Below the pieces are notes generated by a model. It ran no database searches, had not been told where the DNA came from, and saw only the letters and a list, made by a program, of their open reading frames with translations. Positions 7,263 to 47,134 of a stretch of 64,000 nt of DNA are shown piece after piece (the stretch's first letter is position 1; each line of letters begins with the position of its first letter). Made by a program: the position numbers and the translations under genes. The stretch covers positions 1 through 64,000 of IMG/VR virus record IMGVR_UViG_3300020154_000003; one strand, given 5' to 3'.

Positions 7263-8003
7263 TTAAAACTTATCGAAGCTATCTTTAACTTCGTATGGAG
7301 ATAATTTAGGAAGTTGATCAAAATCAGCCATATACCCACCATCCTGAGTCTTAACTATCCCTTTGCTATTCATACTATCCATTCTACCTTGGAATGTGTT
7401 GTTATTCCACATGTCATTTAAATTGAAGTAGTATGGGTGACTATCCATTTTTCTATTGTCAAATTTTTCAACATCAGTAGGTTCCTTAACCTTTTCAACT
7501 TCTTTTGAAAATTGAGCCAATTGTGAATTAAGACTTAAAACCAAACCTTCCAGTTCATCCATCTTTCTTGACATTCCTCTCATTGCGTCCAATTGATATT
7601 CCATTACCTTTTTCTGTAATTCTTCTTTGCTCGGCCCTAGATCAGGTGCTGGAGCAATTGGGGCAGATGTTGCATCCATTGCAGGAGCAGGGGAAGGTAC
7701 TGGTTCAGGTGCTGGCGCAGCAGTTGTTGCTGTTCCTTGAGGGGCAGCAGCAGGGTCAGGAGTAGGTTGTGTTGGTGCCGCAGTTCCCACAGGCTGTGCT
7801 GCAGGGTCTGGTGCTGTAGATGCTGACGTTTGACCAGAAGCAGGTGATATTGCGCCCTCAGCTTCCTTCATGTTCCATCCTTCAGGAATTGGATCAAATG
7901 ACTTGTCATCCATTACCGCACGATAAATCGGACTTTCATTTATAACATACTTACTTTTATAGAGCATTTTTTGAATATGCTCATTAAGTTCTGGCTTCTG
8001 CAT
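7263..8003 (-). CDS. Pro/Ala/Thr-rich late protein with coiled coil; candidate internal head or scaffold-like protein
   Basis: Low-complexity PAPA linker and heptad segment; N-terminus matches that of ORF 46364..47134. Confidence 0.5.
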   Translation of the reverse strand: MQKPELNEHIQKMLYKSKYVINESPIYRAVMDDKSFDPIPEGWNMKEAEGAISPASGQTSASTAPDPAAQPVGTAAPTQPTPDPAAAPQGTATTAAPAPEPVPSPAPAMDATSAPIAPAPDLGPSKEELQKKVMEYQLDAMRGMSRKMDELEGLVLSLNSQLAQFSKEVEKVKEPTDVEKFDNRKMDSHPYYFNLNDMWNNNTFQGRMDSMNSKGIVKTQDGGYMADFDQLPKLSPYEVKDSFDKF

Positions 8004-8014
8004 GTCAGAAATAA

Positions 8015-8191
8015 TTAATATTGTTCTCTCAATAATTGCTTACCATCTTTGGTTACAAAAACCTTGTCAACTCTTTCGATCAAACCTTCGCGGTCGCTCA
8101 ATATCATTTTCTTAGCGTTTTTCGCTTTTCTTTTTGAAGAGTCATTCAAGAAATTGTCCAAAGCATTAGTATTTTTTTCTACGTTGTCCAT
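8015..8191 (-). CDS. Small hypothetical late protein (58 aa), missed by the ORF track
   Basis: Hand translation MDNVEKNTNALDNFLNDSSKRKAKNAKKMILSDREGLIERVDKVFVTKDGKQLLREQY; GTATTTAT 14 nt upstream (8206-8213). Confidence 0.65.
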   Translation of the reverse strand: MDNVEKNTNALDNFLNDSSKRKAKNAKKMILSDREGLIERVDKVFVTKDGKQLLREQY

Positions 8192-8212
8192 AGTAATATT
8201 TTCTCATAAATA

Positions 8213-8818
8213 CTATGAAAATAAGAAAACAACAATACTACGCTTTAATAAGCCAAATTCGGGGAATAATTTATAGAACTTTTGGTATTCTGTAGAATCG
8301 TCCAGTAGGTGATTTTTGGACTTAGATACCATTACATTAATGATGTCATCCACATGATGACCTAAATATTCGTAGATAGATAATTTTAACCCACATATAA
8401 CATGGCCCTTGCGATAATATAGTATATCCTTTTTATAAACATACAAATCACCATTGGGTTTGAAGAAGTTATGAAGTTGTTCAACTGTGTATAGGTTGTG
8501 GAAAAATGGGTCGATATTAACATATTTGTATTTAGATATATAATACTCAGGAATCCTTTTTACAAAGTTTTCCAGTCCCTGCGAGTACTGAACAATATCC
8601 TCTTCCGGGGAAAACTCCCAATACCTTTGATTGACCATATTTTTGGTCAAAATATCAGCTTCGCCACCAGTATTTGTACTTTTGAAGTAATTCCAACCGA
8701 CAATTAAGGTGGGTAACTGGTTTCTAACCTCAGAAACGTCCTTGTAGTAATTAAGGAACTCAACTTCTTTATGATTTATCAGCCGTTCGGGAGAAACAAC
8801 GTTACCTATCTTGATCAT
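8213..8818 (-). CDS. Hypothetical protein, last gene of the glycosylation operon
   Basis: 201-aa ORF whose start overlaps the wecB stop codon by 1 nt. Confidence 0.6.
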   Translation of the reverse strand: MIKIGNVVSPERLINHKEVEFLNYYKDVSEVRNQLPTLIVGWNYFKSTNTGGEADILTKNMVNQRYWEFSPEEDIVQYSQGLENFVKRIPEYYISKYKYVNIDPFFHNLYTVEQLHNFFKPNGDLYVYKKDILYYRKGHVICGLKLSIYEYLGHHVDDIINVMVSKSKNHLLDDSTEYQKFYKLFPEFGLLKRSIVVFLFS

Positions 8819-9837
8819 TAAACTATTTTTGTCTTTTCCAGTATTTTAACAATTTTTTTAGCGGAAAATCCATCGCCAAAGGGACAAATACTATCCTTGA
8901 CCTCAAAATCGATCATCGTTTCCTTAATTAAGGATTCAAGATGTGCTGGTGAGGGGCATAAGGTACTGGTTTGACCCAAAGCTTCTGGCCTTTCCGTCTC
9001 TTTTCGACAAACTATGGTCTTTTTCTGAAAAAATGACGATTCTTCCTGCAATCCACCACTATCAGTCACGACAAATTTACATTTTACTAGAATATTAAGC
9101 AAATCTTCATGATTTAATGGTGGAATCACCTTCACATGAGTCAAAATATCACGATGCTTCATGACATTAGGGTTTGGATGGATCGGTAGAATAAATTCAT
9201 AGTCAGGATATGCTGCTGCGATCCTATTTATCTGTTCAAACCACACATCAATTGAATCGTGGTTCTCGCGCCTATGTAACGTAACCAGTACTTTGTTTGT
9301 ATATTCACACAAATCTTTAAAAGGTAATAAATTATCAAGCACCGTATTCCCCACAATCCATTTTTCACCTCCCACCTGCTCAGATACTAAATTCAGTTCA
9401 TTACTAGGCGTTGGACACAAATGAATGGAGGCTATTTTAGAAATCATCAACCTGTTTGCTTCCTCAGGGAAAGGGTTTTGAAGATCGAATGTGCGCAATC
9501 CAGCTTCAAGGTGAATTACTTTAATTCCGTTGTGAAACGCAGCCAAGGCGACACCTAAAGCAGATGTGGTATCCCCTTGTACCATCACATATTTGTAATC
9601 AAAGTCCTGAAACAATTTAGATGCAGCCACCATTACCGATGACAACACGTTAGTCAAGCGATCAACACGATGAGTTGGTGGTATGTGTAATGAAACATCC
9701 GCACGAACAACATTCAATAAATCCCTATGTTGACCAGTAAATAATGTCTCAAACAAAAATTTTTGATTTACTAATTCATCAATAACAGGCTTAACTTTCA
9801 ACCACTCCGGTCTAGTCCCAAACGCAATGAGAAGCAT
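8818..9837 (-). CDS. wecB: UDP-N-acetylglucosamine 2-epimerase (non-hydrolysing)
   Basis: GTRPE, TGQH, VQGDT, HLEAGLRT, PEEANR, TLHRREN, TDSGGLQEE, RPE, PFGDG motifs. Confidence 0.95.
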   Translation of the reverse strand: MLLIAFGTRPEWLKVKPVIDELVNQKFLFETLFTGQHRDLLNVVRADVSLHIPPTHRVDRLTNVLSSVMVAASKLFQDFDYKYVMVQGDTTSALGVALAAFHNGIKVIHLEAGLRTFDLQNPFPEEANRLMISKIASIHLCPTPSNELNLVSEQVGGEKWIVGNTVLDNLLPFKDLCEYTNKVLVTLHRRENHDSIDVWFEQINRIAAAYPDYEFILPIHPNPNVMKHRDILTHVKVIPPLNHEDLLNILVKCKFVVTDSGGLQEESSFFQKKTIVCRKETERPEALGQTSTLCPSPAHLESLIKETMIDFEVKDSICPFGDGFSAKKIVKILEKTKIV

Positions 9838-10319
9838 TATTCTTTTATAAATTTACCTTTATATGTTTCAATTATGTCACTACATATCCCCACTAAGGAT
9901 TCATTGAGAAAAGCATTATGTAGCTTATCGAAAGTCACGTTCTCGCTTTCAGGCAACACTGCAATACTATTTGCTACCGCACGATTGCCCGGATAAACCC
10001 AAACAAATCCTTTTGAAGTTATTGTATACCAATCCGTATTGTGCCAAAAATAATGGAATCGCTCACCGTTATTAACTAAGTAATTCAATGCCTCCTTATT
10101 TTTTGCGTGAATCCAGAAATGTGAATTAGATAAAAATTCAGGTGAGACTTCATATGTCGGTTCATCATGTCCTAAATAAGGCTTGTCCTTATGCAACCAC
10201 AAATCAATTTCAACATCATAACCTGCCATCAAAGCAGTTACGATATAGTTTGGGGAATTCTCCCAACCACTTTTCCCATTAATATTCCCGCGATGTGAAA
10301 TATATTTAAATTGTTCCAT
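9837..10319 (-). CDS. GDPD/PLC-like phosphodiesterase-fold protein
   Basis: SHRGN, EN(S)P, GYDVEIDLW, LGHD and WIHAKN motifs; short (160 aa). Confidence 0.7.
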   Translation of the reverse strand: MEQFKYISHRGNINGKSGWENSPNYIVTALMAGYDVEIDLWLHKDKPYLGHDEPTYEVSPEFLSNSHFWIHAKNKEALNYLVNNGERFHYFWHNTDWYTITSKGFVWVYPGNRAVANSIAVLPESENVTFDKLHNAFLNESLVGICSDIIETYKGKFIKE

Positions 10320-10650
10320 CTACCACATATTTATCATCTTGTACAGATGGGAGTTTAATCGCAACAATAGCTGCATCAGTTATTGCGCGGAACTCGATTA
10401 TTTCATTTTGAAAAACTTCAATAATATCACCCTCTCCAAAGATTTTATCATTCATTTGCACCTGTCCTGACACCACCACAGTATATTCTTTCGCTATCTT
10501 ATGATAATGTGCGTTATCGACATCGCCCTTCTGATAGTATTTTACAGCAATCTCAAAATCCTTACTATTAACCAGCACCGGATTAAAATTTCCCATGAAC
10601 CAGCCATTAGTAAAGTTTTTCAATTGATGTTTTAGCATATTATTTAACAA
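10306..10650 (-). CDS. Cupin-fold protein (sugar isomerase/epimerase-like)
   Basis: HYHKIAKEYTVVVSG cupin motif 1, followed by GDIIEV. Confidence 0.75.
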   Translation of the reverse strand: MLNNMLKHQLKNFTNGWFMGNFNPVLVNSKDFEIAVKYYQKGDVDNAHYHKIAKEYTVVVSGQVQMNDKIFGEGDIIEVFQNEIIEFRAITDAAIVAIKLPSVQDDKYVVDGTI

Positions 10651-10659
10651 ATATACAAT

Positions 10660-11403
10660 TTAATCTAATATTTTAGAGTGTTTTAAAAAATAGTCAAGGT
10701 CTTCGGGTACACCAATACCCCACATCTTTTTAACATCATAAACCGATATTTTATGATTTTCGGGAATAGCTTCATTATATACTGGTGCCACGTAAAATTC
10801 TCCGTTTACACGAATGTTTTTGTTGATCATTTGCTCCGCATATTTGACATAATCTCTTCCCTCTCTCCAAACATATATTCCAACCGTTGCAACTGTCGAT
10901 ATAGGTTCTTTTTCAGCAACCCTTTTTACAAGACCTTCATCGTTCAACTCCACAAAACTCCATTTAGGATGGGTCGATTCAAACGTTAGTACTACACCAC
11001 TTAATTTATTTGACTCGTCAAACTGTATTTCTAAGTAATTAAGGAACTTCGTTGAGTTATATTGAATAATTTGATCTGAATTGGCAATGATTAATGGTCG
11101 ATCATTATTAATATACTCTTTCGCAAGTAATGTTGTACAAGCTGCACCCTCAGTCAGTGAATCTACTACAACTATTGAGCATCCCGGCTTAATTAAATTC
11201 AAAACCATATCCAACTTATATTTTTCATGATGTTCTTTTTGAACTATAAAAACATAGTCACCATTAATAGATATGTTTTCAACAACAACCTGAATCATTG
11301 GCTTATTATTGATCGGTATTAATGGTTTGGGAAAAGTATAACCAGCATTGGCGAACCGTGAGCCTGCGCCAGCCATTGGGATGAGAATAATAGGTTTTTT
11401 CAT
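10660..11403 (-). CDS. Sugar-phosphate nucleotidyltransferase (GT2_BcE-like / NTP_transferase)
   Basis: IPMAGAGSRF, PKPLI, EGAACT, NSDQ, AEKEPIS, GEFYVAP, GVPEDL. Confidence 0.85.
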   Translation of the reverse strand: MKKPIILIPMAGAGSRFANAGYTFPKPLIPINNKPMIQVVVENISINGDYVFIVQKEHHEKYKLDMVLNLIKPGCSIVVVDSLTEGAACTTLLAKEYINNDRPLIIANSDQIIQYNSTKFLNYLEIQFDESNKLSGVVLTFESTHPKWSFVELNDEGLVKRVAEKEPISTVATVGIYVWREGRDYVKYAEQMINKNIRVNGEFYVAPVYNEAIPENHKISVYDVKKMWGIGVPEDLDYFLKHSKILD

Positions 11404-12044
11404 CTATAAAATCCCTTTGATGCTTGAATGTAATCCAAACGGAATTTTATTGGTTCGTAACGAATTTCACTACTATCTTTTACCTCATACAAATATGCTC
11501 CTGATTTTTTGGCAGCATCGATACCATATTTTGAATCTTCAAAAATCATTGTTTCAAGTGCATCACAACGACCTATTTCCATAGCCAATTCAAACATCTC
11601 AGGATCAGGTTTAGGGTGAATTACATTTTCATTTGAAAGATAATGATCTACATAATCCATCAAACCAGTCTTTTCAAGTGCTGCGCGAATAGTTGCATGT
11701 ATTGAATTTGATGCCACCATTATTTGATACCCATCTTCTTTCAATTTGCGTAATGCTTCGTTAACGTGTTCATCAGGTAATAGAGTGTCCTCAATTACTT
11801 GTGCTGTAATTGCTTGCTTACGATCCCAAACACGTTCATGTTCACTGAGTGGCAACCCTCTTTCCTCTGTAAGCATGTATAATTTTTGTTTTGTTGGAAG
11901 TCCATCATATCTACTTTCATGGTCTTCACGGTTGATGATGAATTTAGGATCAACTTCACCCAATGCCCGATTAAGTGCTTCATAGTGTACGTCCTTCAAT
12001 TCAATCAACGTACCATCCATATCAAATATTAATAATTTTATCAT
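11400..12044 (-). CDS. HAD-family phosphatase (beta-PGM/Gph-like)
   Basis: FDMDGTL (motif I), VASNS (II), KPDP (III), FEDS..G (IV). Confidence 0.9.
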   Translation of the reverse strand: MIKLLIFDMDGTLIELKDVHYEALNRALGEVDPKFIINREDHESRYDGLPTKQKLYMLTEERGLPLSEHERVWDRKQAITAQVIEDTLLPDEHVNEALRKLKEDGYQIMVASNSIHATIRAALEKTGLMDYVDHYLSNENVIHPKPDPEMFELAMEIGRCDALETMIFEDSKYGIDAAKKSGAYLYEVKDSSEIRYEPIKFRLDYIQASKGFYR

Positions 12045-12058
12045 TTGGTTAAATTTAA

Positions 12059-12784
12059 CTAACTATTAGTCCCTCTTGTATAAGGGTTAATTCCATATTT
12101 TTTAAACAATTCCTTCAACTCATTAGAATATTCATCAGTATTCCACTTACCCTTTACTACGGCAGTTGCTATATAGGGATATATCGAACTATCAAAATGA
12201 CTAGTACCCTTTCGTGAAGAGCCACCATCATCAATATAGTAACCGAAGATTTTTCTTTCTATACAAACTCGTTTTGCGTCAACCTCAAACTCCCATACGT
12301 TCCTACCTTTAGAATTATCATATACTTCTCTAAGTTTTTCAAAATTCCAGATTGTCGGTTGTATTGCGAACACACAATCAAACTTATTGGTGATTATTTT
12401 TAATTCAGGATAAGTCGCATCAGATAAGCCAAACGTAATCCCTCCTTTAATCAGTTTAACAAAATACTTATCCTCAATATTTGCTTTTAAATATTCAGTA
12501 AATACTTTAAGCTTATCATGGTTTGGAGTATCATACAAAAACATATCTTCATGTTGGAAAATACAATAATCGACAGTATTAATCTTTTTCAATGCTGATG
12601 ACATCCTTTCTCTATATGTGAGTTTATCATCATATAAAATAACTTCATAATTGATGGGAATACCAGCGACCCATTTATCTACTATGATGTAATGTTTATC
12701 CTCAGGGAAATACTTATTCATCTGACCAAAATATAATGGCCAAATGTCTTTGTAATCGCTATGAGTATAAACTATGAAATTCAT
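12059..12784 (-). CDS. Putative GT-A fold glycosyltransferase
   Basis: Cluster context; YCIFQHEDMFL acidic metal-binding-type motif; QPTIW and WEFE motifs. Confidence 0.55.
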   Translation of the reverse strand: MNFIVYTHSDYKDIWPLYFGQMNKYFPEDKHYIIVDKWVAGIPINYEVILYDDKLTYRERMSSALKKINTVDYCIFQHEDMFLYDTPNHDKLKVFTEYLKANIEDKYFVKLIKGGITFGLSDATYPELKIITNKFDCVFAIQPTIWNFEKLREVYDNSKGRNVWEFEVDAKRVCIERKIFGYYIDDGGSSRKGTSHFDSSIYPYIATAVVKGKWNTDEYSNELKELFKKYGINPYTRGTNS

Positions 12785-16047: not shown

Positions 16048-16048
16048 T

Positions 16049-16816: not shown

Positions 16817-16817
16817 A

Positions 16818-22214: not shown

Positions 22215-22222
22215 ATAAATAC
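22215..22222 (-). promoter_or_regulatory. Putative late promoter GTATTTAT heading the baseplate + glycosylation operon
   Basis: 16 nt upstream of the ATG at 22198. Confidence 0.6.
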
Positions 22223-25793: not shown

Positions 25794-25819
25794 TTAAACT
25801 CGTTTCAGATAAATACCTA

Positions 25820-36542: not shown

Positions 36543-36601
36543 GATTCCCTTAATTTAGTATTTATATATGAAATAAGCTGAATTTTGTATATTTTAGGGT
36601 A

Positions 36602-37625: not shown

Positions 37626-37640
37626 GTTTAGAATAGAGAT

Positions 37641-37675: not shown

Positions 37676-37715
37676 AGGTTTCTAAGGTAAAAATCTTAAT
37701 ATTTTTGAATTATGA

Positions 37716-38204: not shown

Positions 38205-38304
38205 TTTTCTTATATTTTTTTAAATAATTTTATCTCGTTTCTTGTAAATACTTAAATCTTGATATTTGTCTATATTTCAGACTAAATCATTTTCTAATAA
38301 ATAC

Positions 38305-38337
38305 TTGAAATAATGGAAATTTCTTATAATATTTACG
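38305..38337 (+). promoter_or_regulatory. Putative host-RNAP promoter TTG-N18-ATAATATTTACG
   Basis: Third instance of TTG with identical spacing to a TTTACG element, upstream of ORF 38359. Confidence 0.4.
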
Positions 38338-38358
38338 CTTTCCAAAACCCCACAAAAA

Positions 38359-38763: not shown

Positions 38764-38767
38764 AAAA

Positions 38768-38803
38768 TAAAAAAAAGCCTCTTTTTTAAGGAGGCTTTTT
38801 TTT
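38768..38803. terminator. Bidirectional terminator
   Basis: A-tract, GCCTC/GAGGC stem (38777-38795), T-tract. Confidence 0.8.
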
Positions 38804-38822
38804 GAAAGGAGAGGGTGATTAA

Positions 38823-41546
38823 TTAGTTCTCGAAAGAAGCACCTGAAGGAGAGATTGTGAAGTTCAATCCAATGTATTCTACTGATTTAGTAGGTACGAT
38901 TGAGATTTCGCCATACAATTCATTTCTGTCTCTGCTCTCAGGGGTATTATTAGTATCATCCATTTTAACTTGGAATTGCTCTAATCCTCTTTCTCTCTTA
39001 ACAGTATCCAATATTGGATTAACTTTGTTCAAGAAGCTGTCGATTGTAGTTTGATCATTTTGTTCGAAAACAAGTCTAACCGCGATGTTAGAGATCAATA
39101 CTTTCAATTGCAACAACAATCTTCTAACGTTAACTCTGTCAAGAGCAGATTGTCTCTTTTGTAATGTCTTCTGTCCGAAGATAGCAACGCCAGTTTCAGG
39201 GAATGTTGCCATAGGGTTAATTCTACCGTTGTAAAGCGTGTCTCTTTCTTCAAGAGAAAGTTTTCTTCTTGCTCTCTTAGCATCGGTAACACCTCTTTGT
39301 AAACCTGCAGGAGCGAACCAAGGGAATGCAATGTTGTCATTGAATGCGATTGATTTAACAACCTCAGCAGTTGGAGGAATGTATACGTTTTGATTATTTG
39401 TTGTATCTCTAATTTGAATCCAAGGATAGTAGATTGCAGCGTAGCTAGAATCAATATCTGCAGCATCAAGTAAGTCAACAATGTCTTCAGCTAAAGTAGC
39501 TGTATCAGGCTGATCAGGAGCATCAATGATGTACAATGAGTCTGCTCTTCTTTCTTCAACCAATTCGATACCTGAATTAATAAGTGATAAGTTATCACTG
39601 AAGTTAATACCCGGAGTTGCGAATAAGTTGATAGTTACTTGCTCAGGATTTGCAAAAGTTTCAATTGCATTTGCCCATGCTTGGTAATCAGTAGCTACAG
39701 CAGATGCACTTGCAGCACCGTCATAAATCTGACCACTTGCGTAAAGGTCACCATTGCTTCTTCTTACTCTATGTTCATCCCAACCATCGAAACCACCATA
39801 AGGTACGAAAGTGAATTTTCTACTATTTTTAGCGAAGTATGCGTTTGAATTATCAGCCACATCACTTGCAGTTTGGAATGCTGATTCACCAACTTCGAAT
39901 TCACCGATGATTGTTGCACCATCAGAATATGAACCAGTTGCACCTGAATCTAAGTGGAAACCTTTTGTTTTAAGATAGCCACTAGGAGCGTTACCATTGC
40001 TAGTGCTAATATCTAAACCAGCAAAATTGAATAAGTTTTGGTTGATGCCAGTACCTTCCAAGTTTGCTGCATCATAAGCTTTTTCAGACACACCAAGATA
40101 AGTTCTGTTAACTCTGTCAGTAGTTTCGTAAGATGTTTTATAGAACATTGCAGGTGCTTTAGCGTCACTTCCAAAAGAAGTTGCAGAAGCTGCGAAATCG
40201 TAATAAACATATCCTTCAAAACCAGCAGGGAACGCATCGTTAGGAGCATTAGCATCAAGTTCAAGCATGATGAAATTGCTCTGAATATCGAAATCACCAT
40301 CCGATGTACCGATTCTGTTACCAATATAGTTGTTTAAACCTTTCTGCATTGAGCATCTTAAGAATGACTCAAGAGGCACCATATTATCGTCAGTATCATT
40401 GAAATCACGGACAATAATGTCGAATTCTTTTGAAACTGGATCGATGTTTTGGATTGAAATTTTAATCTCTCTGTTAGCTGCGTTACCGTCAGAAATAGAG
40501 ATGAATTTGAATAATCTCTCAACAGTGTTACCACGCAATTCAGAAACAACCCAAGGAGTCTCAGGAGTTTTAAATGCATCTCTGTAATCTGTGAAGGCTG
40601 AAGATGTTGCTTTAACAAGGGTGCTAGAAACACCATATGCAACGCCATCAGCATCTAATTTCTTAATTAAATCAGGAAATACTGATTCAACATATATTTT
40701 TGTGTTTTTACCTTTTGGTTTATTACCAAGTACATTCGAGATGAAGTCTCTTGAATCAGGATTCAATGATACTACATATTCTTCAGAGCCATCAGCACCA
40801 GTTGCAGTGATTGTGAATTTACCAAACAAGTCACCAGTGCCTGTGTTGGTTGCATTTGAAGTAATTGTTACTGCACTCGCATCAAAAGTTGTTTCAGGAG
40901 AAGCATCTTCAACATCTTCAACAGATGCTCTTGATCTGATGAGAGCAACTACCATGTTTTCGTAGTCAGAAAGAGTGTTAGCAGTAATTGTTCTTGTGAA
41001 ATCTGTAACAGTTCCGCTACCACTAGAGTAAGTAAGAACACTTATTTCGTGTTGGACTGTAGTGAAAAAGCTTCCAGTTTTTGTGTAACCAGTATTAACA
41101 ATGCCAGTCTCTCCAGTTGCTGTGATAGACATACCCAAATATGAGCCATTACTATATGCTTCAACTGTTGATCCTGTTGCTGTTTGTCCTGTTGTTGATG
41201 TGTCAACACCTGCACTAAGCGTTACTGCCCATGCTGGCCCTGCCTGATAACCAGACAAACCAAGAACTCTAGTAACGTAAAGTTGATTTGATTGATCCAA
41301 ATAAGAATTTGCCACATAAGGTAGTTGATATTTCAAATCACCTGAAGGGAATTTCTCAATAGATTGTTCACCAAATCTCGCTCTAAATTGTCCTTTGTCC
41401 TCAATCGCTACTGGTTGAAATGCTGGCCCTTTAGGAGTTTCGCCAACCAAACCAAGGGTGGTTACACCAACTGTTTTGGTTACGAATGATAAGTCTTGTT
41501 CTCTAAATTTTACTCCGGGGCTAACGAATACAAAGTTATTTGCCAT
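38823..41546 (-). CDS. Contractile tail sheath protein (T4 gp18-like) with insertion domains
   Basis: FVSPGVKFRE, GETPKGP, YYPW, IPPTAEV, WFAPAG..RG, NGRINP, GQKT, DRVNVRRL, FEQND. Confidence 0.95.
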   Translation of the reverse strand: MANNFVFVSPGVKFREQDLSFVTKTVGVTTLGLVGETPKGPAFQPVAIEDKGQFRARFGEQSIEKFPSGDLKYQLPYVANSYLDQSNQLYVTRVLGLSGYQAGPAWAVTLSAGVDTSTTGQTATGSTVEAYSNGSYLGMSITATGETGIVNTGYTKTGSFFTTVQHEISVLTYSSGSGTVTDFTRTITANTLSDYENMVVALIRSRASVEDVEDASPETTFDASAVTITSNATNTGTGDLFGKFTITATGADGSEEYVVSLNPDSRDFISNVLGNKPKGKNTKIYVESVFPDLIKKLDADGVAYGVSSTLVKATSSAFTDYRDAFKTPETPWVVSELRGNTVERLFKFISISDGNAANREIKISIQNIDPVSKEFDIIVRDFNDTDDNMVPLESFLRCSMQKGLNNYIGNRIGTSDGDFDIQSNFIMLELDANAPNDAFPAGFEGYVYYDFAASATSFGSDAKAPAMFYKTSYETTDRVNRTYLGVSEKAYDAANLEGTGINQNLFNFAGLDISTSNGNAPSGYLKTKGFHLDSGATGSYSDGATIIGEFEVGESAFQTASDVADNSNAYFAKNSRKFTFVPYGGFDGWDEHRVRRSNGDLYASGQIYDGAASASAVATDYQAWANAIETFANPEQVTINLFATPGINFSDNLSLINSGIELVEERRADSLYIIDAPDQPDTATLAEDIVDLLDAADIDSSYAAIYYPWIQIRDTTNNQNVYIPPTAEVVKSIAFNDNIAFPWFAPAGLQRGVTDAKRARRKLSLEERDTLYNGRINPMATFPETGVAIFGQKTLQKRQSALDRVNVRRLLLQLKVLISNIAVRLVFEQNDQTTIDSFLNKVNPILDTVKRERGLEQFQVKMDDTNNTPESRDRNELYGEISIVPTKSVEYIGLNFTISPSGASFEN

Positions 41547-41601
41547 TTGCTATTGATATTTTAGTTTATAATTATAATTTGCTTAGTTTGAAACTTTTTT
41601 T

Positions 41602-41652
41602 ATAAATACTATTCTTTCCGTCAAAATCAATATTTTTCGACATTGTATTTAT
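41602..41652. promoter_or_regulatory. Back-to-back divergent late promoters (ATAAATAC 41602-41609; GTATTTAT 41645-41652)
   Basis: The motif appears once on each strand, each pointing into a structural gene. Confidence 0.6.
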
Positions 41653-41674
41653 AAAAAATAATAAGTACTCATTT

Positions 41675-43813
41675 ATGGGAAATAAGTCATACAGGATAAA
41701 AACTACCGCAGGTGGTAGTGATAAATACTTGAAAGTTAAGCTAGAGCAAGAAACTGACCTCGTAGAAATTTTATCGTTGAAAATAACCCAAAAGGACATT
41801 TACGCTAGTTTTAACGCTGATTTTGGGGTTCTGGTCGGTAGAGTGCTTGCAAATGGAGGAATAGGGATTCCGAATGCCAAAATTTCAATTTTTATACCGA
41901 TTACGGATGACGATAAGACCAATTCAGAAATAGCTTCAATTTACCCATATACCAATCCAAGGGATAAAAATGCTGATGGGGTTCGATATAATCTTCTTCC
42001 ACGGGTTGCAGTTAATAACCCATTCAATACCGCAGGTCAATTCACACCAGCCGTGCCAGTAGGTACTTTCCCTACAAAAGAGGAAATCACGACAAATGAG
42101 ACATTCTTAGAGGTTTACAAGAAGTATTTTAAATACACCACCGTAACTAACACCTCAGGAGATTATATGATCTACGGGGTTCCTGTGGGCCTCCACACAG
42201 TTCATATGTCTGTGGATGTAACTGACATTGGGGATTATTCAATGACTCCCGGAACTATGGTGAGCCAGCTTGGTTATTCGCCAGTACTGTTCGAAAATAA
42301 TAAGGTAAAGTTCAGTACTGACTTAGATACTATACCAAATATTGAAACCCAAAATATAAGTGTGGACATTCGACCTTTTTGGGGTGATCGAGATAATTTC
42401 GAGATTGGTATAACCAGACAAGATTTTAAAATTCGTGCTACGTTGGTTTCAAGCGTGACAGTATTTGGTGCTGGATTCACCGATAATTTTTATGCTTCAT
42501 ATGGTAGAGACGATTATTTTGGGGATAGAGATGATTCAGCATCAGCGATGTCTCAAAATGAAGGGGAATATCCTCAACCTGCTAGTGGTGATGCTGGCGT
42601 TCGTGATGGTGTTAAGTATAACGTTGGTGTTGCATCAAGAAGAAATGGATTATTTGAGATTGAAGTGTATACAATTCCAAATACTGTCACGATGAATGAA
42701 ATTCAGAGTGGTGATTTTAATACGACAACGGACATACAGCTATTAGATAAGTCTCAATATAATGAAATTTTAGATGATGGTATGTTTATTCTAACATTAC
42801 CTTGCAATAGAGCCAAAAAAGTAGTAAATGAGTTTGGTGAGTTGGTTGATACAACTGATGATGATCCTAATGGTATTTTTACGCAATTCGTTGGTATGTT
42901 TATTATTGATTATGGGCCAGAATTGTCACAATATCAAATAAATAATGTGACTGATAGAAGTCAAAGAAGTAGACAAGACAGAACAAGAATTAAAATTCCT
43001 CAATCTGCTCCAGACCCTGTGTTGGAGGAAATTTTTGGACTTACTTTTGAAGCTTCAGACACGTTTTCCACTGAAAGAGATGGAAATTTTGGTGGAAAAA
43101 CTAAAGAACAACGAATAGAATTGAATGAGCGATGGAGAAAACAAGCATTCAATTTTGAGGGAGGTAAAATATATAGTGTTGCAAAATTCTATGGAACTGC
43201 TTACGAAGATCAGGCTGGTGCTAGAGTTAGATACTCGATGACTGGCGATACTACAAATAAAAATCTTGACGTTTGGAGAAATGCTGGTGGCTTACCTCAA
43301 TTAAGTAGTGGCGACACGGCGCAGGAATTTCCATATAACGTTACTAATGCGACATACAATTTTAATTGGAGTAATGCTCCTGAGCCATTAATATCAAACG
43401 TAAAAACTTTTGCTGGTGAATGGTTAAATATGTGTATTTATTTCCCGCAAATATTTAATTATACTGGTGGTGAACAAGATGTTACACGTATGTTAACTAC
43501 TGATTATGCTGGTCATACCGATATGACTATTGAAAATACTTACAATGTGGTAGGTACAAGAAAAGATACGTCTTACTTCTTGAGATCGGACATTCATCAA
43601 TCAACATTTATTGAAGTACCTAAAGCGGATTTAGTTAATATAATTCAGAATGCACCCGATAAAAAAGGATTTACTAGTGCTGATCCTGAATTTCTTTCAA
43701 ATCCATTAAGTGGTTCATACCAAGGATTGGCCGACACAAAATACTTTTATCGAGGTTTACATGATGCTGATGTTATCACATTTTTGCAACAAAATGGTAT
43801 TATATCGGCATAA
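41675..43813 (+). CDS. Putative virion structural protein with an N-terminal carboxypeptidase-regulatory-like beta domain
   Basis: GVLVGRVLANGGIGIPNAKISIF and TNTSGDYMIYGVPVG pattern; late motif upstream. Confidence 0.55.
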   Translation: MGNKSYRIKTTAGGSDKYLKVKLEQETDLVEILSLKITQKDIYASFNADFGVLVGRVLANGGIGIPNAKISIFIPITDDDKTNSEIASIYPYTNPRDKNADGVRYNLLPRVAVNNPFNTAGQFTPAVPVGTFPTKEEITTNETFLEVYKKYFKYTTVTNTSGDYMIYGVPVGLHTVHMSVDVTDIGDYSMTPGTMVSQLGYSPVLFENNKVKFSTDLDTIPNIETQNISVDIRPFWGDRDNFEIGITRQDFKIRATLVSSVTVFGAGFTDNFYASYGRDDYFGDRDDSASAMSQNEGEYPQPASGDAGVRDGVKYNVGVASRRNGLFEIEVYTIPNTVTMNEIQSGDFNTTTDIQLLDKSQYNEILDDGMFILTLPCNRAKKVVNEFGELVDTTDDDPNGIFTQFVGMFIIDYGPELSQYQINNVTDRSQRSRQDRTRIKIPQSAPDPVLEEIFGLTFEASDTFSTERDGNFGGKTKEQRIELNERWRKQAFNFEGGKIYSVAKFYGTAYEDQAGARVRYSMTGDTTNKNLDVWRNAGGLPQLSSGDTAQEFPYNVTNATYNFNWSNAPEPLISNVKTFAGEWLNMCIYFPQIFNYTGGEQDVTRMLTTDYAGHTDMTIENTYNVVGTRKDTSYFLRSDIHQSTFIEVPKADLVNIIQNAPDKKGFTSADPEFLSNPLSGSYQGLADTKYFYRGLHDADVITFLQQNGIISA

Positions 43814-43840
43814 AAAAAAAGCCTCCATATGGAGGCTTTT
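43812..43840. terminator. Bidirectional terminator
   Basis: AAAAGCCTCC-ATAT-GGAGGCTTTT perfect hairpin between convergent genes. Confidence 0.85.
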
Positions 43841-43859
43841 CGGTTTAGGTCTGGTTAGG

Positions 43860-44360
43860 TTATTTTAATGTGAATGTCATGACAACCTTCTCAACGTCTT
43901 GAAGCCGCATACCCGAATTAACTTGTACGGTCTTCTTACTTAAATCTTTTGCTGGTGTTATGATCTCGAATTCCCATCCATTACTTGTGGTGACCAGTAA
44001 CTTTCCGTTGGTTTCCTTCACTTCATATGTTGATTCTACAGTTTTCGATTGACAATTTAATATTTGTGATGCTTTTGCACCTGCAGCAAATTTAAAGTCA
44101 ATATCTTCAAGGTTGGCTTTTACTGCTTGAGGAAAGCCTGTTTCATCACAACCTCCATTGAAGGTGTAATCAACGGAATTATCGGTAACTACAATGGATT
44201 GAAGTTCCCATGTTCCAATAATCCCTTCTTTCACCAATTCCAGATTGGTTTTAGTAGGTTCTTTTGGTTGCGGGTCTTCCGACTCATCTCCACACGAAGT
44301 GAAAGACAGGGCTACAACGGCCAAAACCATTGTAAAAAGGCTGAATTTAAGGTTTTTCAT
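43860..44360 (-). CDS. Bacteroidota-type lipoprotein, lipocalin-like
   Basis: Signal peptide II MKNLKFSLFTMVLAVVALSFTS-C, acidic GDESED after Cys, then IIGTWELQS lipocalin-like start. Confidence 0.75.
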   Translation of the reverse strand: MKNLKFSLFTMVLAVVALSFTSCGDESEDPQPKEPTKTNLELVKEGIIGTWELQSIVVTDNSVDYTFNGGCDETGFPQAVKANLEDIDFKFAAGAKASQILNCQSKTVESTYEVKETNGKLLVTTSNGWEFEIITPAKDLSKKTVQVNSGMRLQDVEKVVMTFTLK

Positions 44361-44460
44361 AATATTAAAGTTTATTTAAGTGTCTGTTAATCAATTATAC
44401 GTAAATAAGTTAAAAATGTTTTGGTTTATTGAAAAAATCATTTATTAGCTATTTATACGT

Positions 44461-45603
44461 ATGAATGAGCCAATTCAGATTCAGTTAGGAAGTAGTAGAA
44501 GTGTAAACAGTATAAATGTTGACGAATACGTAAATATAGGTCTTCAAAGTAATGAAGTCACGATTTTACCATATAGTCAAACCTCAGTTATAAATGTGGC
44601 TGAAATATTTGATAACGAAAGACAGGCGAGTTTAAATTATAGAATATATGGTGACGTGGATTTTTTGAGTGTTGTTAATGGATTGTTAAAAACTTATACA
44701 AAAGTCTCTGATTTTTTCACAAGGCCATTAATAGGATCGGAACAGCTTGGGCTAACACGGAATCTTTTGAATTGTTTTGATATTTATCTTTGTAAATTAT
44801 CAACTGGTCATACTTCGGGTGCATCGTCATTATATAATACAAGATACGAAATTTTAACAAATCTATCTGACATTGAACTTTACAATTCAGGTTACGGTAA
44901 GAATATCTTCAACGATCAAAAGTATTCCTTTAATTTTAATATAGACGTTGATGTTACTGATATGTGGGACAGTTTCGGTAAACCGATAATGAATCTTTAT
45001 CTGTTCTTTAATTTTAAGCCTGTGATTGAAAAAGGAGAAACAGTTTCAAAAAAATTCTTCATACCTTCTGCTCCAGATCAACCAATAACGTATCAAGTTT
45101 ATAGTAAAGGTGACGTTGTAGATGGTGATTTGGTTTTTTATGAAAAATCGAATTTTGAAGAAGTTCTCATTGAAAGGCAAGAATATTTTGTCACTTTCCC
45201 TTGTACCGATGTGGGCATAAACGTCTTACAATTTAAATATTATCCTTTTGTTCCAGTAAAGTTAAGAGATTTTTCAGATGTTATTGTGAGTGCCAATATT
45301 AGTGGAACTAGTATAAACGATACTGAAATACCTTCATATGCAGTGAAAATCGATAATGATGGTAATTATATTTGGAAAAACATTTTAGAAAATGGATATA
45401 TTGACCCCATCTCAAACTTGGGTGTTAATCATCCCTTTGTTAACAACACACACTATGTATTTACTAATGTAATACTGGATTTAGTACCTGATTTAGACAA
45501 CTCATTTACTCAAACTGCATTTACTAACATTAAGTTTGGCCCGAATACTTTACTTAACAGCAAGCCAATAACTTCACTTAACAACCTTGGGACAAAATGT
45601 TAA
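44461..45603 (+). CDS. Putative virion structural protein
   Basis: 380 aa; CTATTTAT immediately upstream. Confidence 0.5.
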   Translation: MNEPIQIQLGSSRSVNSINVDEYVNIGLQSNEVTILPYSQTSVINVAEIFDNERQASLNYRIYGDVDFLSVVNGLLKTYTKVSDFFTRPLIGSEQLGLTRNLLNCFDIYLCKLSTGHTSGASSLYNTRYEILTNLSDIELYNSGYGKNIFNDQKYSFNFNIDVDVTDMWDSFGKPIMNLYLFFNFKPVIEKGETVSKKFFIPSAPDQPITYQVYSKGDVVDGDLVFYEKSNFEEVLIERQEYFVTFPCTDVGINVLQFKYYPFVPVKLRDFSDVIVSANISGTSINDTEIPSYAVKIDNDGNYIWKNILENGYIDPISNLGVNHPFVNNTHYVFTNVILDLVPDLDNSFTQTAFTNIKFGPNTLLNSKPITSLNNLGTKC

Positions 45604-46331
45604 AATATAATGTTCGTATATCGCCAGTTGGTAATGATTTAAATTTAACATTTCCCCTTTCCAGTAAATCAAACTTGAGTGGGTTAAGTCAGGATATTCA
45701 AGACCTTGTGACTGATCAGTCGGATAACAGTATTAATTTAGGTACGGATGGAGAAAAAACTCGGTTTACTCCTAACGGATTTACAGGTATCACATTTTGG
45801 AATGGTATTATGACTGGTTTTACCACGTTAGAAGTTAAAACTCAAGCATATGTTAATAGTTTCTTCATCATTCAAATCTATGATACACCAGTAAGCGATA
45901 CTCAAACCTTGCTGCATACCAGTTTCATTAATGGTTATTATTTTACAACAGGAGTGACTGCCATTTTTGATTGGACGAACGTGTTTGAATACACTGACCT
46001 TCACATACCTACTGATTATTTGGCAACTTTTTCAGGTAATACTGTTAATGTATATTGTAAAACTAATTTTTATAATGCTAAATTAGGTAAAATTGATCCG
46101 TTTTACGATGTGTATGCAACTGGCAATACAGAATCGAAACTTTATAAAATGATGACTTTGAATAAAACGAATAGAACCTATTCAATTACTGGAAATATGC
46201 ATTTTGCCAAGATCAATAATCCAGAATATGTAGAATTGATCAATGACAGCATTGAATCCTTTAATGTTGAGAAGCCAACTTACCCTACAGGGAATACTTT
46301 CAATCCAAACGGTACGTATACAATCATTTAA
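45597..46331 (+). CDS. Putative virion structural protein, Thr-rich
   Basis: 244 aa, overlaps the previous gene; six [ST]-G-x-T motifs. Confidence 0.5.
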   Translation: MLKYNVRISPVGNDLNLTFPLSSKSNLSGLSQDIQDLVTDQSDNSINLGTDGEKTRFTPNGFTGITFWNGIMTGFTTLEVKTQAYVNSFFIIQIYDTPVSDTQTLLHTSFINGYYFTTGVTAIFDWTNVFEYTDLHIPTDYLATFSGNTVNVYCKTNFYNAKLGKIDPFYDVYATGNTESKLYKMMTLNKTNRTYSITGNMHFAKINNPEYVELINDSIESFNVEKPTYPTGNTFNPNGTYTII

Positions 46332-46363
46332 GAAAGTTTTAGTATTTATTATAAAGTATTTTT

Positions 46364-47134
46364 ATGGAAAAAAAGTCACTAAATGAGCATATTGATAGAA
46401 TGATAAAAATTTCGGAATACAAAATTCCTGAAACCAAAAGAACTTTGGTTGAAATGTCGTTACCTATCGGTGAAGTGGCCCCAATGGGACAACAACCACA
46501 GCAACAAAATCCTGCTCAGGTAGATCAAGCCTTCGAAAGAGAGGTTGATGCAGCACTTAATCAAATAATGCAGACTTTACCACAAGAATTACAGAAAATA
46601 GCGACCACACAAGGTGATAAAGACGGTCAAATTGAACCAATAGGTCAGGAAAATCAACAACCTGCTGCCCAACCACAAGGTAATCCTGTAGCTGAAGCTG
46701 AATTAAATGAAGCAGTGGGAGCACTGATCGCAGGTGGAGCCTTGGCATTGCCCGCAATAGGTAATTTAGTAGGAAAAGCGATCTCTTTTTTAGGTAAAAG
46801 AGCCGATAGTCAAGTAATTCAAAAGATGGGTGATCGTGTAACCCATGCTGCGGAGCATTTACATCATAAATATGAATCTATTATTGATAGAATTCTCAGT
46901 CCCTTAACGAAAAATCTCGATCCAAACACCAGAAAGTTAATTAACAAAGGCGTTTTTTACGCGATTGTTGCTGCTTTAGGTGGTGCTGGTGCAATTGGAG
47001 CCACACACGCAGTACAAGGAGGTAACATTGGCCTTGCTGCCGTTGAAGGTGGATTGACAGGAGTGAAAGCCAGCGAGTTAGTTGCTGCAGCCCGCACAAT
47101 TATCCCAAGAATTTTGAGCCAAGTAGTTGCGTAA
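46364..47134 (+). CDS. Late protein with Gln/Pro linker and Gly/Ala-rich hydrophobic helices; candidate internal/ejected protein
   Basis: GTATTTAT 14 nt upstream; leader shared with ORF 7263..8003. Confidence 0.5.
   Translation: MEKKSLNEHIDRMIKISEYKIPETKRTLVEMSLPIGEVAPMGQQPQQQNPAQVDQAFEREVDAALNQIMQTLPQELQKIATTQGDKDGQIEPIGQENQQPAAQPQGNPVAEAELNEAVGALIAGGALALPAIGNLVGKAISFLGKRADSQVIQKMGDRVTHAAEHLHHKYESIIDRILSPLTKNLDPNTRKLINKGVFYAIVAALGGAGAIGATHAVQGGNIGLAAVEGGLTGVKASELVAAARTIIPRILSQVVA

What the first reader, a model, noticed from the sequence alone, without database searches (positions are those of the whole stretch)
7935..47134. Two unrelated late proteins share a position-exact 23-aa N-terminal leader (candidate capsid-targeting sequence)
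Seen: ORF 7263..8003 begins MQKPELNEHIQKMLYKSKYVINE and ORF 46364..47134 begins MEKKSLNEHIDRMIKISEYKIPE. The consensus is M-x-K-x-x-L-N-E-H-I-x-[KR]-M-x-x-x-S-x-Y-x-I-x-E. The genes are about 38 kb apart, dissimilar elsewhere, and both lie behind GTATTTAT. Established: T4 internal proteins carry a short N-terminal capsid-targeting sequence removed by the prohead protease at L/I-x-E sites; both leaders contain LNE and I-x-E. Inference: this is a packaging and processing signal marking proteins loaded into the head, and it could be used to find all such cargo.
Basis: partly seen in the sequence, partly recalled or inferred. Interest (0 to 1): 0.65.

Follow-up and report, generated by a model that had tools for sequence, protein, structure and literature searches.

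The report
Detachable prohead tag copied from scaffold
Two unrelated late proteins of an uncultured 366-kb T4-like jumbo phage start with the same short helix, which also ends the phage's presumed scaffolding protein and one large protein, so it is most likely a removable tag that loads proteins into the growing phage head.

Summary
ORF A (7263-8003, minus) and ORF B (46364-47134, plus) share 12 of 23 N-terminal residues and nothing else. About 30 homologues of each family conserve the leader, and profile comparison aligns only the leader (E 5e-7).

The genome is a T4-like jumbo phage. It has a Gp23-type capsid protein, an S77 (gp21-type) prohead protease and a Portal_T4 portal just outside the window. 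GTATTTAT behaves as a late-promoter motif.

In both families an invariant Glu, preceded by an aliphatic residue, follows the helix. The capsid protein carries the same -INE|S- at its predicted maturation site.

The motif is not only an N-terminal leader:
- It also forms the extreme C-terminus of the protein encoded between protease and capsid genes, in 12 genomes of the clade.
- It also ends an 874-aa protein family.
- Pairwise profile E-values run from 2e-6 to 7e-4; controls give 0.4-0.7.
- In these proteins a conserved aliphatic-x-Glu lies on the body side of the helix.

Best reading: a detachable docking helix, borrowed from the scaffold tail, that loads A, B and the large protein into proheads and is then cut off.

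Packaging, cleavage and the binding partner are all inferred; none was tested.

The parts
7263..8003 (-). ORF A, 246 aa. Leader helix, then a conserved segment to about residue 48, a Pro/Ala-rich disordered linker, a long helix (126-172) and a strongly conserved C-terminal region. Acidic (pI 4.7).
   Evidence: At least 108 related loci in IMG/VR. No Pfam, PHROG or PDB match.
7935..8003 (-). Leader of A, residues 1-23. Predicted helix 4-17, ending in V-I-N-E23 followed by S-P. Y19, E23, P25 and Y27 are invariant in the 33-member family.
46364..47134 (+). ORF B, 256 aa. Leader helix, then a Gln/Pro-rich disordered linker, helix 50-84, a second linker, and a helical bundle (108-255) with two hydrophobic Gly/Ala-rich segments (114-144, 193-217). 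A nearly invariant ..LNE116|A lies just before the bundle.
   Evidence: No Pfam, PHROG or PDB sequence match and no fold match.
46364..46453 (+). Leader of B, residues 1-30. Predicted helix 4-17, then a short basic stretch and the family-invariant Glu30 (L-V-E|M here; mostly N-E|S in relatives).
   Evidence: hhalign to the scaffold tail covers B residues 8-31.
46342..46349 (+). GTATTTAT, late-promoter-like motif 14 nt upstream of the B start codon.
8206..8213 (-). GTATTTAT upstream of the 58-aa ORF; the probable promoter of the 58-aa ORF plus A unit.
8015..8191 (-). Conserved 58-aa ORF immediately upstream of A, probably co-transcribed with it.
   Evidence: orthologues lie at the same position in 7 relatives, with a near-identical C-terminal half.
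8213..8818 (-). 201-aa ORF, syntenic with A across the clade; function unknown.
5777..7159 (-). 460-aa ORF downstream of A with its own GTATTTAT. It is syntenic with A across the clade and 47-69% identical over the aligned parts, more conserved than A. Function unknown.

Best explanation
The shared leader is a short, detachable prohead-docking helix. Its core is roughly [L/I]-N-E-[H/Q]-[I/L/V]-x-[K/R]-[M/I]-x-x-x-x-x-Y, often followed by a small basic patch. It is the same element that ends the phage's own presumed scaffolding protein.

Proposed mechanism:
1. Scaffolding proteins use their terminal helix to hold on to the inside of the assembling shell. Proteins that carry a copy of that helix are co-assembled into the prohead core. 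These are A and B (N-terminal copies) and an 874-aa protein (C-terminal copy).
2. The T4-type S77 prohead protease then cuts after a conserved Glu on the body side of the helix. The sites are V-I-N-E23|S in A and L-V-E30|M in B, with aliphatic-x-Glu just before the helix in the C-terminal copies. This frees the mature proteins inside the head, as the protease frees the capsid protein at ..MINE60|S61.
3. Mature B, with two hydrophobic Gly/Ala-rich helices, would be an internal or ejected membrane-active protein.
4. Mature A (linker, coiled coil, conserved C-domain) would be an accessory core or internal protein.

Shown by computation: the motif, its conservation, its terminal positions in four protein families, the flanking conserved Glu, the T4-type head genes and the late-promoter context.

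Inferred: prohead targeting, cleavage, and the identity of the partner. The capsid protein's unusually conserved N-terminal propeptide is my first guess for the partner.
For: Motif and conservation:
- Leader conserved in both families.
- hhalign A versus B aligns only the leader, E 5e-7.
- Both leaders fold as helix 4-17 followed by disorder, with an amphipathic hydrophobic moment of 0.38-0.50.

T4-type head module just outside the window:
- Gp23 capsid protein, S77 protease, portal and terminase.
- Gene order is protease, then a 497-aa acidic protein, then the capsid protein, as in T4 genes 21-22-23.

Same motif at C-termini:
- A leader-only profile hits the last 40 residues or so of orthologous 865-1700-aa proteins in 8 relatives, and the last 25 residues or so of the scaffold-position protein in 2.
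- The G000 orthologue of the large protein (283295-285919, minus) ends with the motif.
- Scaffold tails of 12 genomes share it.
- Profile-profile E-values: large-protein plus scaffold tails versus leaders 7.6e-7; scaffold versus leaders 2e-5; scaffold versus whole B family 1.6e-5, hitting only residues 8-31; scaffold versus whole A family 6.7e-4; large-protein tail versus A 1.6e-5, versus B 8e-5, versus scaffold 1.7e-6.
- Negative controls give 0.4-0.7.
- A combined HMM picks exactly these four proteins in G000 before noise.

Cleavage context:
- Invariant E23 in A and E30 in B.
- An invariant Glu lies before the helix in scaffold tails, and [I/V]-N-E at the start of the large-protein tails.
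- The capsid propeptide ends ..MINE|S in all 13 genomes.
- B-family members with a different, longer N-terminus keep the invariant Glu.

Modularity: a further, unrelated 364-aa protein in G003 starts with a leader-like sequence.

Late expression: GTATTTAT context.

Precedents:
- T4 CTS and L/I-x-E processing (PMC9026906, PMC5694885).
- The 80alpha scaffold and SaPI1 CpmB share a C-terminal helix-and-hook that binds the capsid protein (PMC5644958).
Against: - No experimental data exist. The clade is uncultured, and A and B have no tblastn match in 50,697 phage records.
- The 497-aa protein is called a scaffold only from gene position, acidity and coiled-coil-like composition. It has no similarity to T4 gp22.
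- In G000 itself the two C-terminal copies are diverged. A leader-only profile does not find them at E <= 1. They rest on family-level profile comparisons and on an HMM that contained them.
- In a leave-out scan of G003, the scaffold tail (E 0.19) and the 364-aa protein (E 1.1) sit among noise.
- Aliphatic-x-Glu is a weak motif. The scaffold-position protein alone has 33 such sites.
- A is not in the head module. It lies beside replication and recombination genes.
- The complex prediction (protease with the A leader) could not be run.
Confidence: 0.6

Rival explanations
1. The helix does not dock on the shell. It pairs with other copies of itself or with the scaffold body, as a coiled-coil-type association. 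A, B and the 874-aa protein then join the core by binding scaffold tails rather than the capsid protein. The outcome is still packaging and cleavage, but with a different partner.
For: The motif is an amphipathic helix. A and the scaffold-position protein are coiled-coil-rich. T4 CTS-bearing proteins are said to associate with the scaffolding core (PMC3012670, PMC5694885).
Against: Nothing discriminates this from shell docking. In the one system solved at near-atomic resolution, the shared scaffold tail binds the capsid protein (PMC5644958).
Confidence: 0.15
2. The motif is a recognition element (exosite ligand or degron) for the prohead protease rather than a targeting signal. It marks proteins for processing, and they enter the prohead by other means.
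For: Every copy is flanked by, and usually begins with, an aliphatic-x-Glu site such as L-N-E or I-N-E. All presumed bearers are plausible protease substrates.
Against: The capsid protein, the main substrate, has the -INE|S- site but not the helix. T4 gp21 needs only a very short motif (PMC9026906). The extreme-terminus position in a scaffold-position protein is typical of shell-binding tails (PMC5644958).
Confidence: 0.12
3. The helix has nothing to do with heads. It could be, for example, an amphipathic membrane-association helix or a binding site for a host chaperone or a tail assembly factor. B would then be a membrane protein, such as a lysis or exclusion protein, made late.
For: B has two membrane-span-like segments and lies next to tail-region genes. 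A lies among replication genes.
Against: This does not explain why the motif ends the protein encoded between the prohead protease and the capsid protein in 12 genomes. It also does not explain the invariant flanking Glu that matches the capsid maturation site.
Confidence: 0.08
4. The resemblance is a relic of recombination or chance and has no common function.
For: The motif is short. Single-sequence scores for the C-terminal copies are weak.
Against: Conservation holds across families at 30% overall identity, while the adjacent linkers are unalignable. All six family-to-family profile comparisons are significant and three controls are null.
Confidence: 0.03

Closest known systems
Capsid targeting sequence (CTS) of phage T4 internal proteins IPI-III and Alt (Mullaney & Black 1996, as reviewed in PMC9026906, PMC5694885, PMC3012670)
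   Same: A short N-terminal propeptide shared by otherwise unrelated late proteins. It ends at an aliphatic-x-Glu site, in a phage with a gp21-type (S77) prohead protease and a Gp23 capsid protein, and is proposed to bind the prohead core and be cut off. In T4 itself the scaffold gp22 also begins with a CTS-like sequence (..QLIAE|A against ..EFIAE|A).
   Different: - About 20-30 residues with a 14-residue helix, against 10 residues in T4.
- No evident sequence resemblance to the T4 CTS.
- Also found at C-termini, including the scaffold-position protein's tail.
- Only two N-terminal bearers per genome.
- Function not demonstrated.
C-terminal helix-and-hook of the 80alpha scaffolding protein, shared with SaPI1 CpmB (PMC5644958)
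   Same: A short amphipathic helix plus a small basic tail at the extreme C-terminus of the scaffold. A copy on another internal protein uses the same site on the capsid protein. Here the scaffold tails end ..helix..GKKII and B continues ..helix..GKK...
   Different: - Different phage lineage and no sequence relation.
- Here copies sit at N-termini as well.
- The motif is coupled to proteolytic removal.
- The bearers belong to the phage itself rather than to a satellite.
- Binding to the capsid protein is untested.
Propeptides of ejection and inner-body proteins of phiKZ-like giant phages (SPN3US gp47, gp53/54; PMC5694885)
   Same: N-terminal propeptides removed after Glu by a gp21-related protease. 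Identical N-termini occur on diverged proteins. SPN3US gp47 has a propeptide followed by a transmembrane segment, like B.
   Different: Those propeptides are mostly over 100 residues, the cleavage motif is A/S-x-E, the conserved N-termini belong to paralogues, and no link to a scaffold tail is known.
Encapsulin cargo-loading peptides (own knowledge, not checked here)
   Same: It works alike: a short terminal peptide, N- or C-terminal, that docks cargo on the inner face of an HK97-fold shell.
   Different: No sequence relation, no proteolytic release, and a bacterial compartment rather than a virus.

Membership tests
T4-type capsid targeting sequence (CTS) | Short propeptide at the extreme N-terminus, shared by proteins otherwise unrelated | tested here: met
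   Residues 1-23/30 of A and B. Only the leader aligns.
T4-type capsid targeting sequence (CTS) | Phage encodes a gp21-type (Peptidase_S77) prohead protease and a Gp23-type shell | tested here: met
   PF03420 E 6.9e-23 at G000:69088-69567. PF07068 E 6.6e-63.
T4-type capsid targeting sequence (CTS) | Propeptide ends in an L/I-x-E site | tested here: met
   I-N-E23 in A and L-V-E30 in B, both with a family-invariant Glu. This tests sequence context only.
T4-type capsid targeting sequence (CTS) | Sequence related to the T4 CTS (MKTYQEFIAE) | tested here: inconclusive
   T4 IPII/IPIII, gp22, gp24, gp67 and gp68 N-termini were read. No resemblance by eye beyond the terminal aliphatic-x-Glu, and 10 residues are too few for a test.
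T4-type capsid targeting sequence (CTS) | Actual cleavage by the protease, and presence of the mature protein in heads | not testable with these tools
   Uncultured phage, no proteomics.
T4-type capsid targeting sequence (CTS) | Leader sufficient to carry a foreign protein into the head | not testable with these tools
   Needs a fusion experiment.
Scaffold C-terminal shell-binding tail (80alpha SP / CpmB type) | Motif at the extreme C-terminus of the scaffolding protein | tested here: met
   Last 20-25 residues or so of the protein encoded directly upstream of the capsid gene, in 12 genomes. The scaffold identity itself rests on position and composition.
Scaffold C-terminal shell-binding tail (80alpha SP / CpmB type) | The same motif on other internal proteins | tested here: met
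   hhalign of scaffold tail against leaders 2e-5, B 1.6e-5, A 6.7e-4 and large-protein tail 1.7e-6; controls 0.4-0.7.
Scaffold C-terminal shell-binding tail (80alpha SP / CpmB type) | Amphipathic helix followed by a short hook | tested here: inconclusive
   A helix is predicted for the two leaders, with amphipathic moment 0.38-0.50. The scaffold tail itself was not folded. A basic GKK(II) patch follows in most tails.
Scaffold C-terminal shell-binding tail (80alpha SP / CpmB type) | Binds the capsid protein N-arm in procapsids | not testable with these tools
   Needs cryo-EM or binding assays.
Encapsulin cargo-loading peptide | Consensus cargo-loading peptide and an encapsulin shell gene | not tested
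   Analogy only, from my own knowledge. No comparison with the encapsulin consensus was run. The shell here is a Gp23 phage capsid protein.

The most novel reading that the evidence does not exclude
A clade of about 320-370-kb T4-like jumbo phages uses one portable terminal helix, derived from the scaffold's own shell-binding tail, as a universal encapsidation tag. The tag works at either end of a protein and is clipped off by the prohead protease. Cargo sets evolve by moving this tag: A and the 874-aa protein appear in all complete genomes searched, B in some, and a 364-aa protein in G003. The T4 CTS may be the same principle, since gp22 begins with a CTS-like sequence. If so, the tag would give a sequence rule for predicting packaged and injected proteins in uncultured phages, and a handle for loading foreign proteins.
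Probability: 0.4. Interest if true: 0.75.

Novelty: new variant of a known kind. Interest (0 to 1): 0.6.

Why it matters
It is hard to know which proteins a phage packs into its head and injects with its DNA when the phage cannot be grown. Such proteins include anti-defence factors, membrane-active pilots and polyvalent enzymes. A recognisable tag that also ties the cargo to the scaffold's own docking tail would have three uses:
- It would let head cargo be predicted from metagenomic sequence.
- It would suggest how T4-type capsid targeting sequences arose, namely by mimicking a scaffold terminus.
- It would offer a candidate tag for loading foreign proteins into large capsids.

The idea is directly testable with recombinant capsid protein, scaffold, protease and leader-reporter fusions.

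Tried and rejected
- Cultured relatives: megablast of 7 kb around A, and tblastn of A, B and two distant homologues against 50,697 phage records, found nothing.
- Annotation: Pfam, PHROGs and PDB sequence searches gave nothing useful for A, B, their neighbours, the 874-aa protein, the scaffold-position protein or the G003 364-aa protein. The only hits were coiled-coil noise.
- ESM Atlas gave only unnamed viral clusters.
- Foldseek of the B model against PDB and BFVD gave no match below E 0.3. The A model was too poor to search (pTM 0.20).
- I considered A as the gp22-position scaffold, because the neighbouring ORF sizes (201, 246, 460 and 423 aa) mimic T4 genes 21-24. I rejected this because the true Gp23/S77 module lies at 65.7-69.7 kb.
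- An all-against-all N-terminal comparison of 606 ORFs found no other shared leader. It found only paralogue N-domains of three large proteins.
- I considered the 1405-aa polyvalent protein as a third leader bearer because its N-terminus ends ..IINE|T. The helix is not detectably related, and the N-terminus is not conserved in G001.
- A pattern scan of IMG/VR with the 4-leader alignment confirmed nothing.
- The Logan contig carrying a leaderless B homologue could not be searched as a genome.
It gives no verdict either way.
- The large protein-representative search and the sequencing-read tools were not used.

Full report
**1. What is in the window**

The window is bases 1-64000 of a 366,038-bp IMG/VR virus record, rated 100% complete by CheckV's estimate, with about 35% G+C. 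It encodes:
- a 907-aa contractile tail sheath, 38823-41546 minus;
- a DnaB-type helicase, a UvsX-like recombinase, exonucleases and a thymidylate synthase.

Just outside the window lies a T4-type head module:
- a Gp23-family major capsid protein (MCP), 65670-67340 minus, PF07068 E 6.6e-63;
- a 497-aa acidic protein, 67410-68903 minus;
- a Peptidase_S77 (gp21-type) prohead protease, 68995-69729 minus, PF03420 E 6.9e-23;
- a Portal_T4 portal and a T4-type large terminase.

The order protease, 497-aa protein, MCP is that of T4 genes 21-22-23. The MCP is only about 30% identical to its nearest phage records: uncultured huge phages, Microcystis phage Mel-JY01 and Salicola SCTP-2. The phage is therefore a deep-branching, uncultured T4-like jumbo phage.

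**2. The observation**

- BLASTP aligns residues 1-24 (12 identical, 17 similar) and nothing else of note.
- LNEHI occurs nowhere else in the six-frame translation of the genome.
- A leader HMM finds only these two ORFs: E 4e-7 and 2e-6, with the next hit at 0.69.
- The word search gave 29 B-family and 33 A-family proteins, all from metagenomes.
- In both alignments the N-terminus is among the best conserved parts, while the adjacent Pro/Ala- or Gln/Pro-rich linkers cannot be aligned.
- hhalign of the two family alignments aligns only the first 25 columns: probability 92%, E 5e-7.
- AlphaFold2 predicts a helix at residues 4-17 followed by disorder in both proteins.

**3. Late expression**

- GTATTTAT occurs 14 times in the window, against 5.5 +/- 2.6 in shuffles.
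- Genome-wide, 48 of 87 copies lie within 80 nt upstream of an ORF in the right orientation, mostly 10-25 nt from the start codon. Sixteen lie in the wrong orientation.
- The motif precedes the sheath, the 497-aa protein, the protease, the portal, the terminase and several very large ORFs.
- B has a copy 14 nt upstream of its start codon.
- A has none. The copy at 8206-8213 precedes a conserved 58-aa ORF that ends 11 nt before A.

"Late gene" is therefore a reasonable inference for both. For A it depends on co-transcription with the 58-aa ORF.

**4. Cleavage context**

- In A, Y19, E23, P25 and Y27 are invariant. The site reads [V/I]-[I/V]-[N/S]-E|[S/T]-P across the A-family sequences, including about 70 further loci recovered from IMG/VR.
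E30 is invariant: L-V-E|M here, mostly x-N-E|S in relatives.
- Four B-family members replace the leader with a longer, unrelated N-terminus yet keep that Glu. This fits a removable pro-region.
- The MCP has ..Y-M-I-N-E60|S61, 12 residues before the segment that aligns to residue 29 of mature T4 gp23. Its pro-region aligns with that of T4 gp23. The stretch is identical in all 13 genomes examined.
- The MCP N-terminal 60 residues are more conserved than the rest of the protein. By my own count, G000 and G010 share about 85% identity there, against 75% overall.
- T4 gp21 cleaves after Glu in L/I-x-E (PMC9026906).

Cleavage of A and B after E23 and E30 is therefore plausible, but it is inferred. 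Aliphatic-x-Glu is a weak motif: the 497-aa protein has 33 such sites.

**5. The motif is not only an N-terminal leader**

I built a profile of 22 leaders and searched 16 related IMG/VR genomes.
- It found the A orthologue in every genome, at E about 1e-11 to 1e-14 in 13 of them and about 1e-5 in two. In the 23%-complete fragment G017 only the B orthologue was hit.
- It found B orthologues in three genomes.
- Unexpectedly, it hit the extreme C-terminus of orthologous 865-1700-aa proteins in eight genomes (E 3e-4 to 0.015 per genome).
- It also hit the C-terminus of 540-561-aa proteins in two genomes. Those proteins lie directly upstream of the MCP gene, so they are the counterparts of the 497-aa protein.

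I then read the tails of the scaffold-position protein in 12 genomes. They share ..[N/D]-x-H-[I/L]-x-[K/R]-M-x-x-[L/I]-I-x-[Y/T].., followed in most by G-K-K-I-I and the stop codon. The G000 and G001 tails are more diverged versions.

G000 has an orthologue of the large protein (283295-285919 minus, 874 aa). Its last 30 residues carry the motif.

Profile-profile comparisons:

| Comparison | E-value | Note |
|---|---|---|
| Large-protein + scaffold tails vs leaders | 7.6e-7 | probability 92% |
| Scaffold tails vs leaders | 2e-5 | |
| Scaffold tails vs whole B family | 1.6e-5 | only hit is B residues 8-31, including the basic patch after the helix |
| Scaffold tails vs whole A family | 6.7e-4 | only hit is the leader |
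| Large-protein tails vs A | 1.6e-5 | |
| Large-protein tails vs B | 8e-5 | |
| Large-protein tails vs scaffold tails | 1.7e-6 | |
| Negative controls (two unrelated families) | 0.4-0.7 | three comparisons |

An HMM built from all instances picks out four G000 proteins before noise: A 2e-11, B 7e-9, the 874-aa tail 5e-5 and the 497-aa tail 0.022, with the next hit at 0.79.

Caveats:
- That HMM contained the four sequences.
- A leader-only profile does not reach the two C-terminal copies in G000 at E <= 1.
- In a leave-out scan of the whole G003 genome, the scaffold tail scores only 0.19.
- The C-terminal link is therefore solid at family level and weak for single sequences.

**6. Geometry**

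In the N-terminal copies the conserved Glu lies just after the helix. In the C-terminal copies a conserved aliphatic-x-Glu lies just before it or at its first turn:
- [V/I]-[V/I]-E about seven residues upstream of the helix in scaffold tails;
- [I/V]-N-E at the start of the large-protein tails.

In every case a cut would separate the helix from the body of the protein.

**7. Interpretation**

In the phage system where this has been seen at near-atomic resolution (80alpha), the last 16 residues of the scaffold form an amphipathic helix plus a short hook. This binds the capsid protein N-arm, and the satellite protein CpmB carries a copy of the same tail and uses the same site (PMC5644958).

In T4, short N-terminal capsid targeting sequences bring internal proteins into the scaffolding core and are removed by gp21 (PMC9026906, PMC3012670, PMC5694885).

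The simplest account of the data here combines the two. The helix is the scaffold's docking tail, and copies of it load A, B and the 874-aa protein into the prohead. The S77 protease then detaches them.

The likely nature of the bearers:
- B: its body has two hydrophobic Gly/Ala-rich segments (114-144, 193-217) preceded by a nearly invariant ..LNE116|A. It resembles SPN3US gp47, which has a propeptide followed by a transmembrane segment and is an ejection protein (PMC5694885). It is a candidate internal or ejected membrane-active protein.
- A: it is found in at least 108 IMG/VR loci and always sits in the cluster 339 aa, 201 aa, 58 aa, A, 460 aa. Its architecture is scaffold-like: linker, 47-residue helix and a highly conserved C-terminal region. 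It may be an accessory core protein.

The partner of the helix is unknown. The MCP's unusually conserved pro-region is my first guess. Pairing with scaffold tails, or binding to the protease, are the main alternatives.

Further hints of modularity:
- A 364-aa protein of another family in G003 begins with a leader-like sequence ending ..V-I-L-E|N. It scores in the noise in a single-genome scan.
- In T4 itself the scaffold gp22 begins ..QLIAE|A, much like the IPII/IPIII CTS ..EFIAE|A. This is too short to test statistically, so it is only a lead. It suggests that copying a scaffold terminus may be general in T4-type targeting.

**8. Known or new**

The concept is known from the T4 CTS, from scaffold-tail sharing in 80alpha/SaPI1, and from giant-phage propeptides. 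The following were not described in any paper my three full-text searches returned:
- this particular motif;
- its presence at both N- and C-termini;
- its identity with the scaffold-position protein's tail;
- its occurrence in an uncultured clade of roughly 320-370-kb T4-like phages.

I rate it a new variant of a known kind.

**9. Limits**

- Nothing here shows that A, B or the 874-aa protein are in virions, that they are cleaved, or what the helix binds.
- The scaffold assignment rests on gene order, acidity (pI 4.9) and coiled-coil-like composition. There is no similarity to T4 gp22.

Noticed in passing
window 5765-5772, 7176-7183, 8206-8213, 22215-22222, 25809-25816, 36558-36565, 38297-38304, 41602-41609, 41645-41652, 46342-46349, 53893-53900, 62953-62960 and others: GTATTTAT is enriched: 14 copies against 5.5 expected in the window. 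It sits 10-25 nt upstream of many ORFs, including the sheath, protease, portal and terminase genes. It is a likely late-promoter element, differing from T4's TATAAATA.
   Followed up: partly
window 8015-8191 (-): A 58-aa ORF just upstream of A is conserved in 7 relatives, with a near-identical C-terminal half (..EREGLIERVDKV.VTKDGKQLLREQY). Function unknown.
   Followed up: partly
window 4371-9837 (-): The gene cluster 339 aa, 201 aa, 58 aa, A, 460 aa, 423 aa is syntenic across the clade. Apart from the 339-aa ORF (phrog_29538, function unknown) none has a Pfam or PHROG match, and profiles of the 201- and 460-aa families find nothing in the PDB. The ORF sizes mimic T4 genes 21-24, but there is no detectable similarity. 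The 460-aa protein is the most conserved.
   Followed up: partly
G000:139695-139805, 146624-146917 (one TAA inside), 122002-122082 (outside the window): Short Gp23-like fragments are scattered far from the real capsid gene. One sits in a 204-aa ORF that repeats the ..FPV[I/V]R[R/K]VFA.. segment.
   Followed up: no
G000:323214-327431 (-) (outside the window): A 1405-aa polyvalent protein behind a late-promoter motif. It combines an ART-PolyVal ADP-ribosyltransferase, a 2H/Acb1-like phosphoesterase and a poly(A)-polymerase/CCA-type nucleotidyltransferase. Its N-terminus ends ..IINE|T, like the capsid maturation site. It is a candidate packaged and injected protein without the helix motif. The N-terminus is not conserved in G001.
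   Followed up: partly
window 48071-51010 (-); G000:342695-346447 and 346477-350835: Three large ORFs (979, 1250 and 1452 aa) share only their first 40-70 residues or so. This is probably a common attachment domain of fibre-like proteins.
   Followed up: no
G003:149248-150342 (-), locus L152:526-1617: A 364-aa protein of an unrelated, unannotated family starts with a leader-like sequence (..KLKKILYLTEY..KKVILE|N). It may be an additional cargo in that phage. The score is not above noise in a whole-genome scan.
   Followed up: partly
proteins P0024-P0027; locus L010:6001-6846: A B-family subgroup has a longer, unrelated N-terminal extension but keeps the invariant Glu. In that 260-kb contig the gene lies about 4.8 kb downstream of the large terminase gene, with four ORFs in between.
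   Followed up: partly
T4 NC_000866: loci L137:8118-8207 and L172:2827-2916, 2130-2219: T4 scaffold gp22 begins MLKEQLIAE|A, resembling the IPII/IPIII capsid targeting sequence MKTYQEFIAE|A. gp24 and gp68 have similar ..L[L/I]xE| starts.
   Followed up: no
window 59814-60986 (+): The thymidylate synthase is 390 aa and matches the 266-position Pfam model in two stretches, which suggests an insertion.
   Followed up: no
protein P0009 / locus L095:3001-3768: The database start of this B homologue is probably mis-called. The upstream ATG restores a leader (MDKHIKRILEMSNY..YINE|S).
   Followed up: yes
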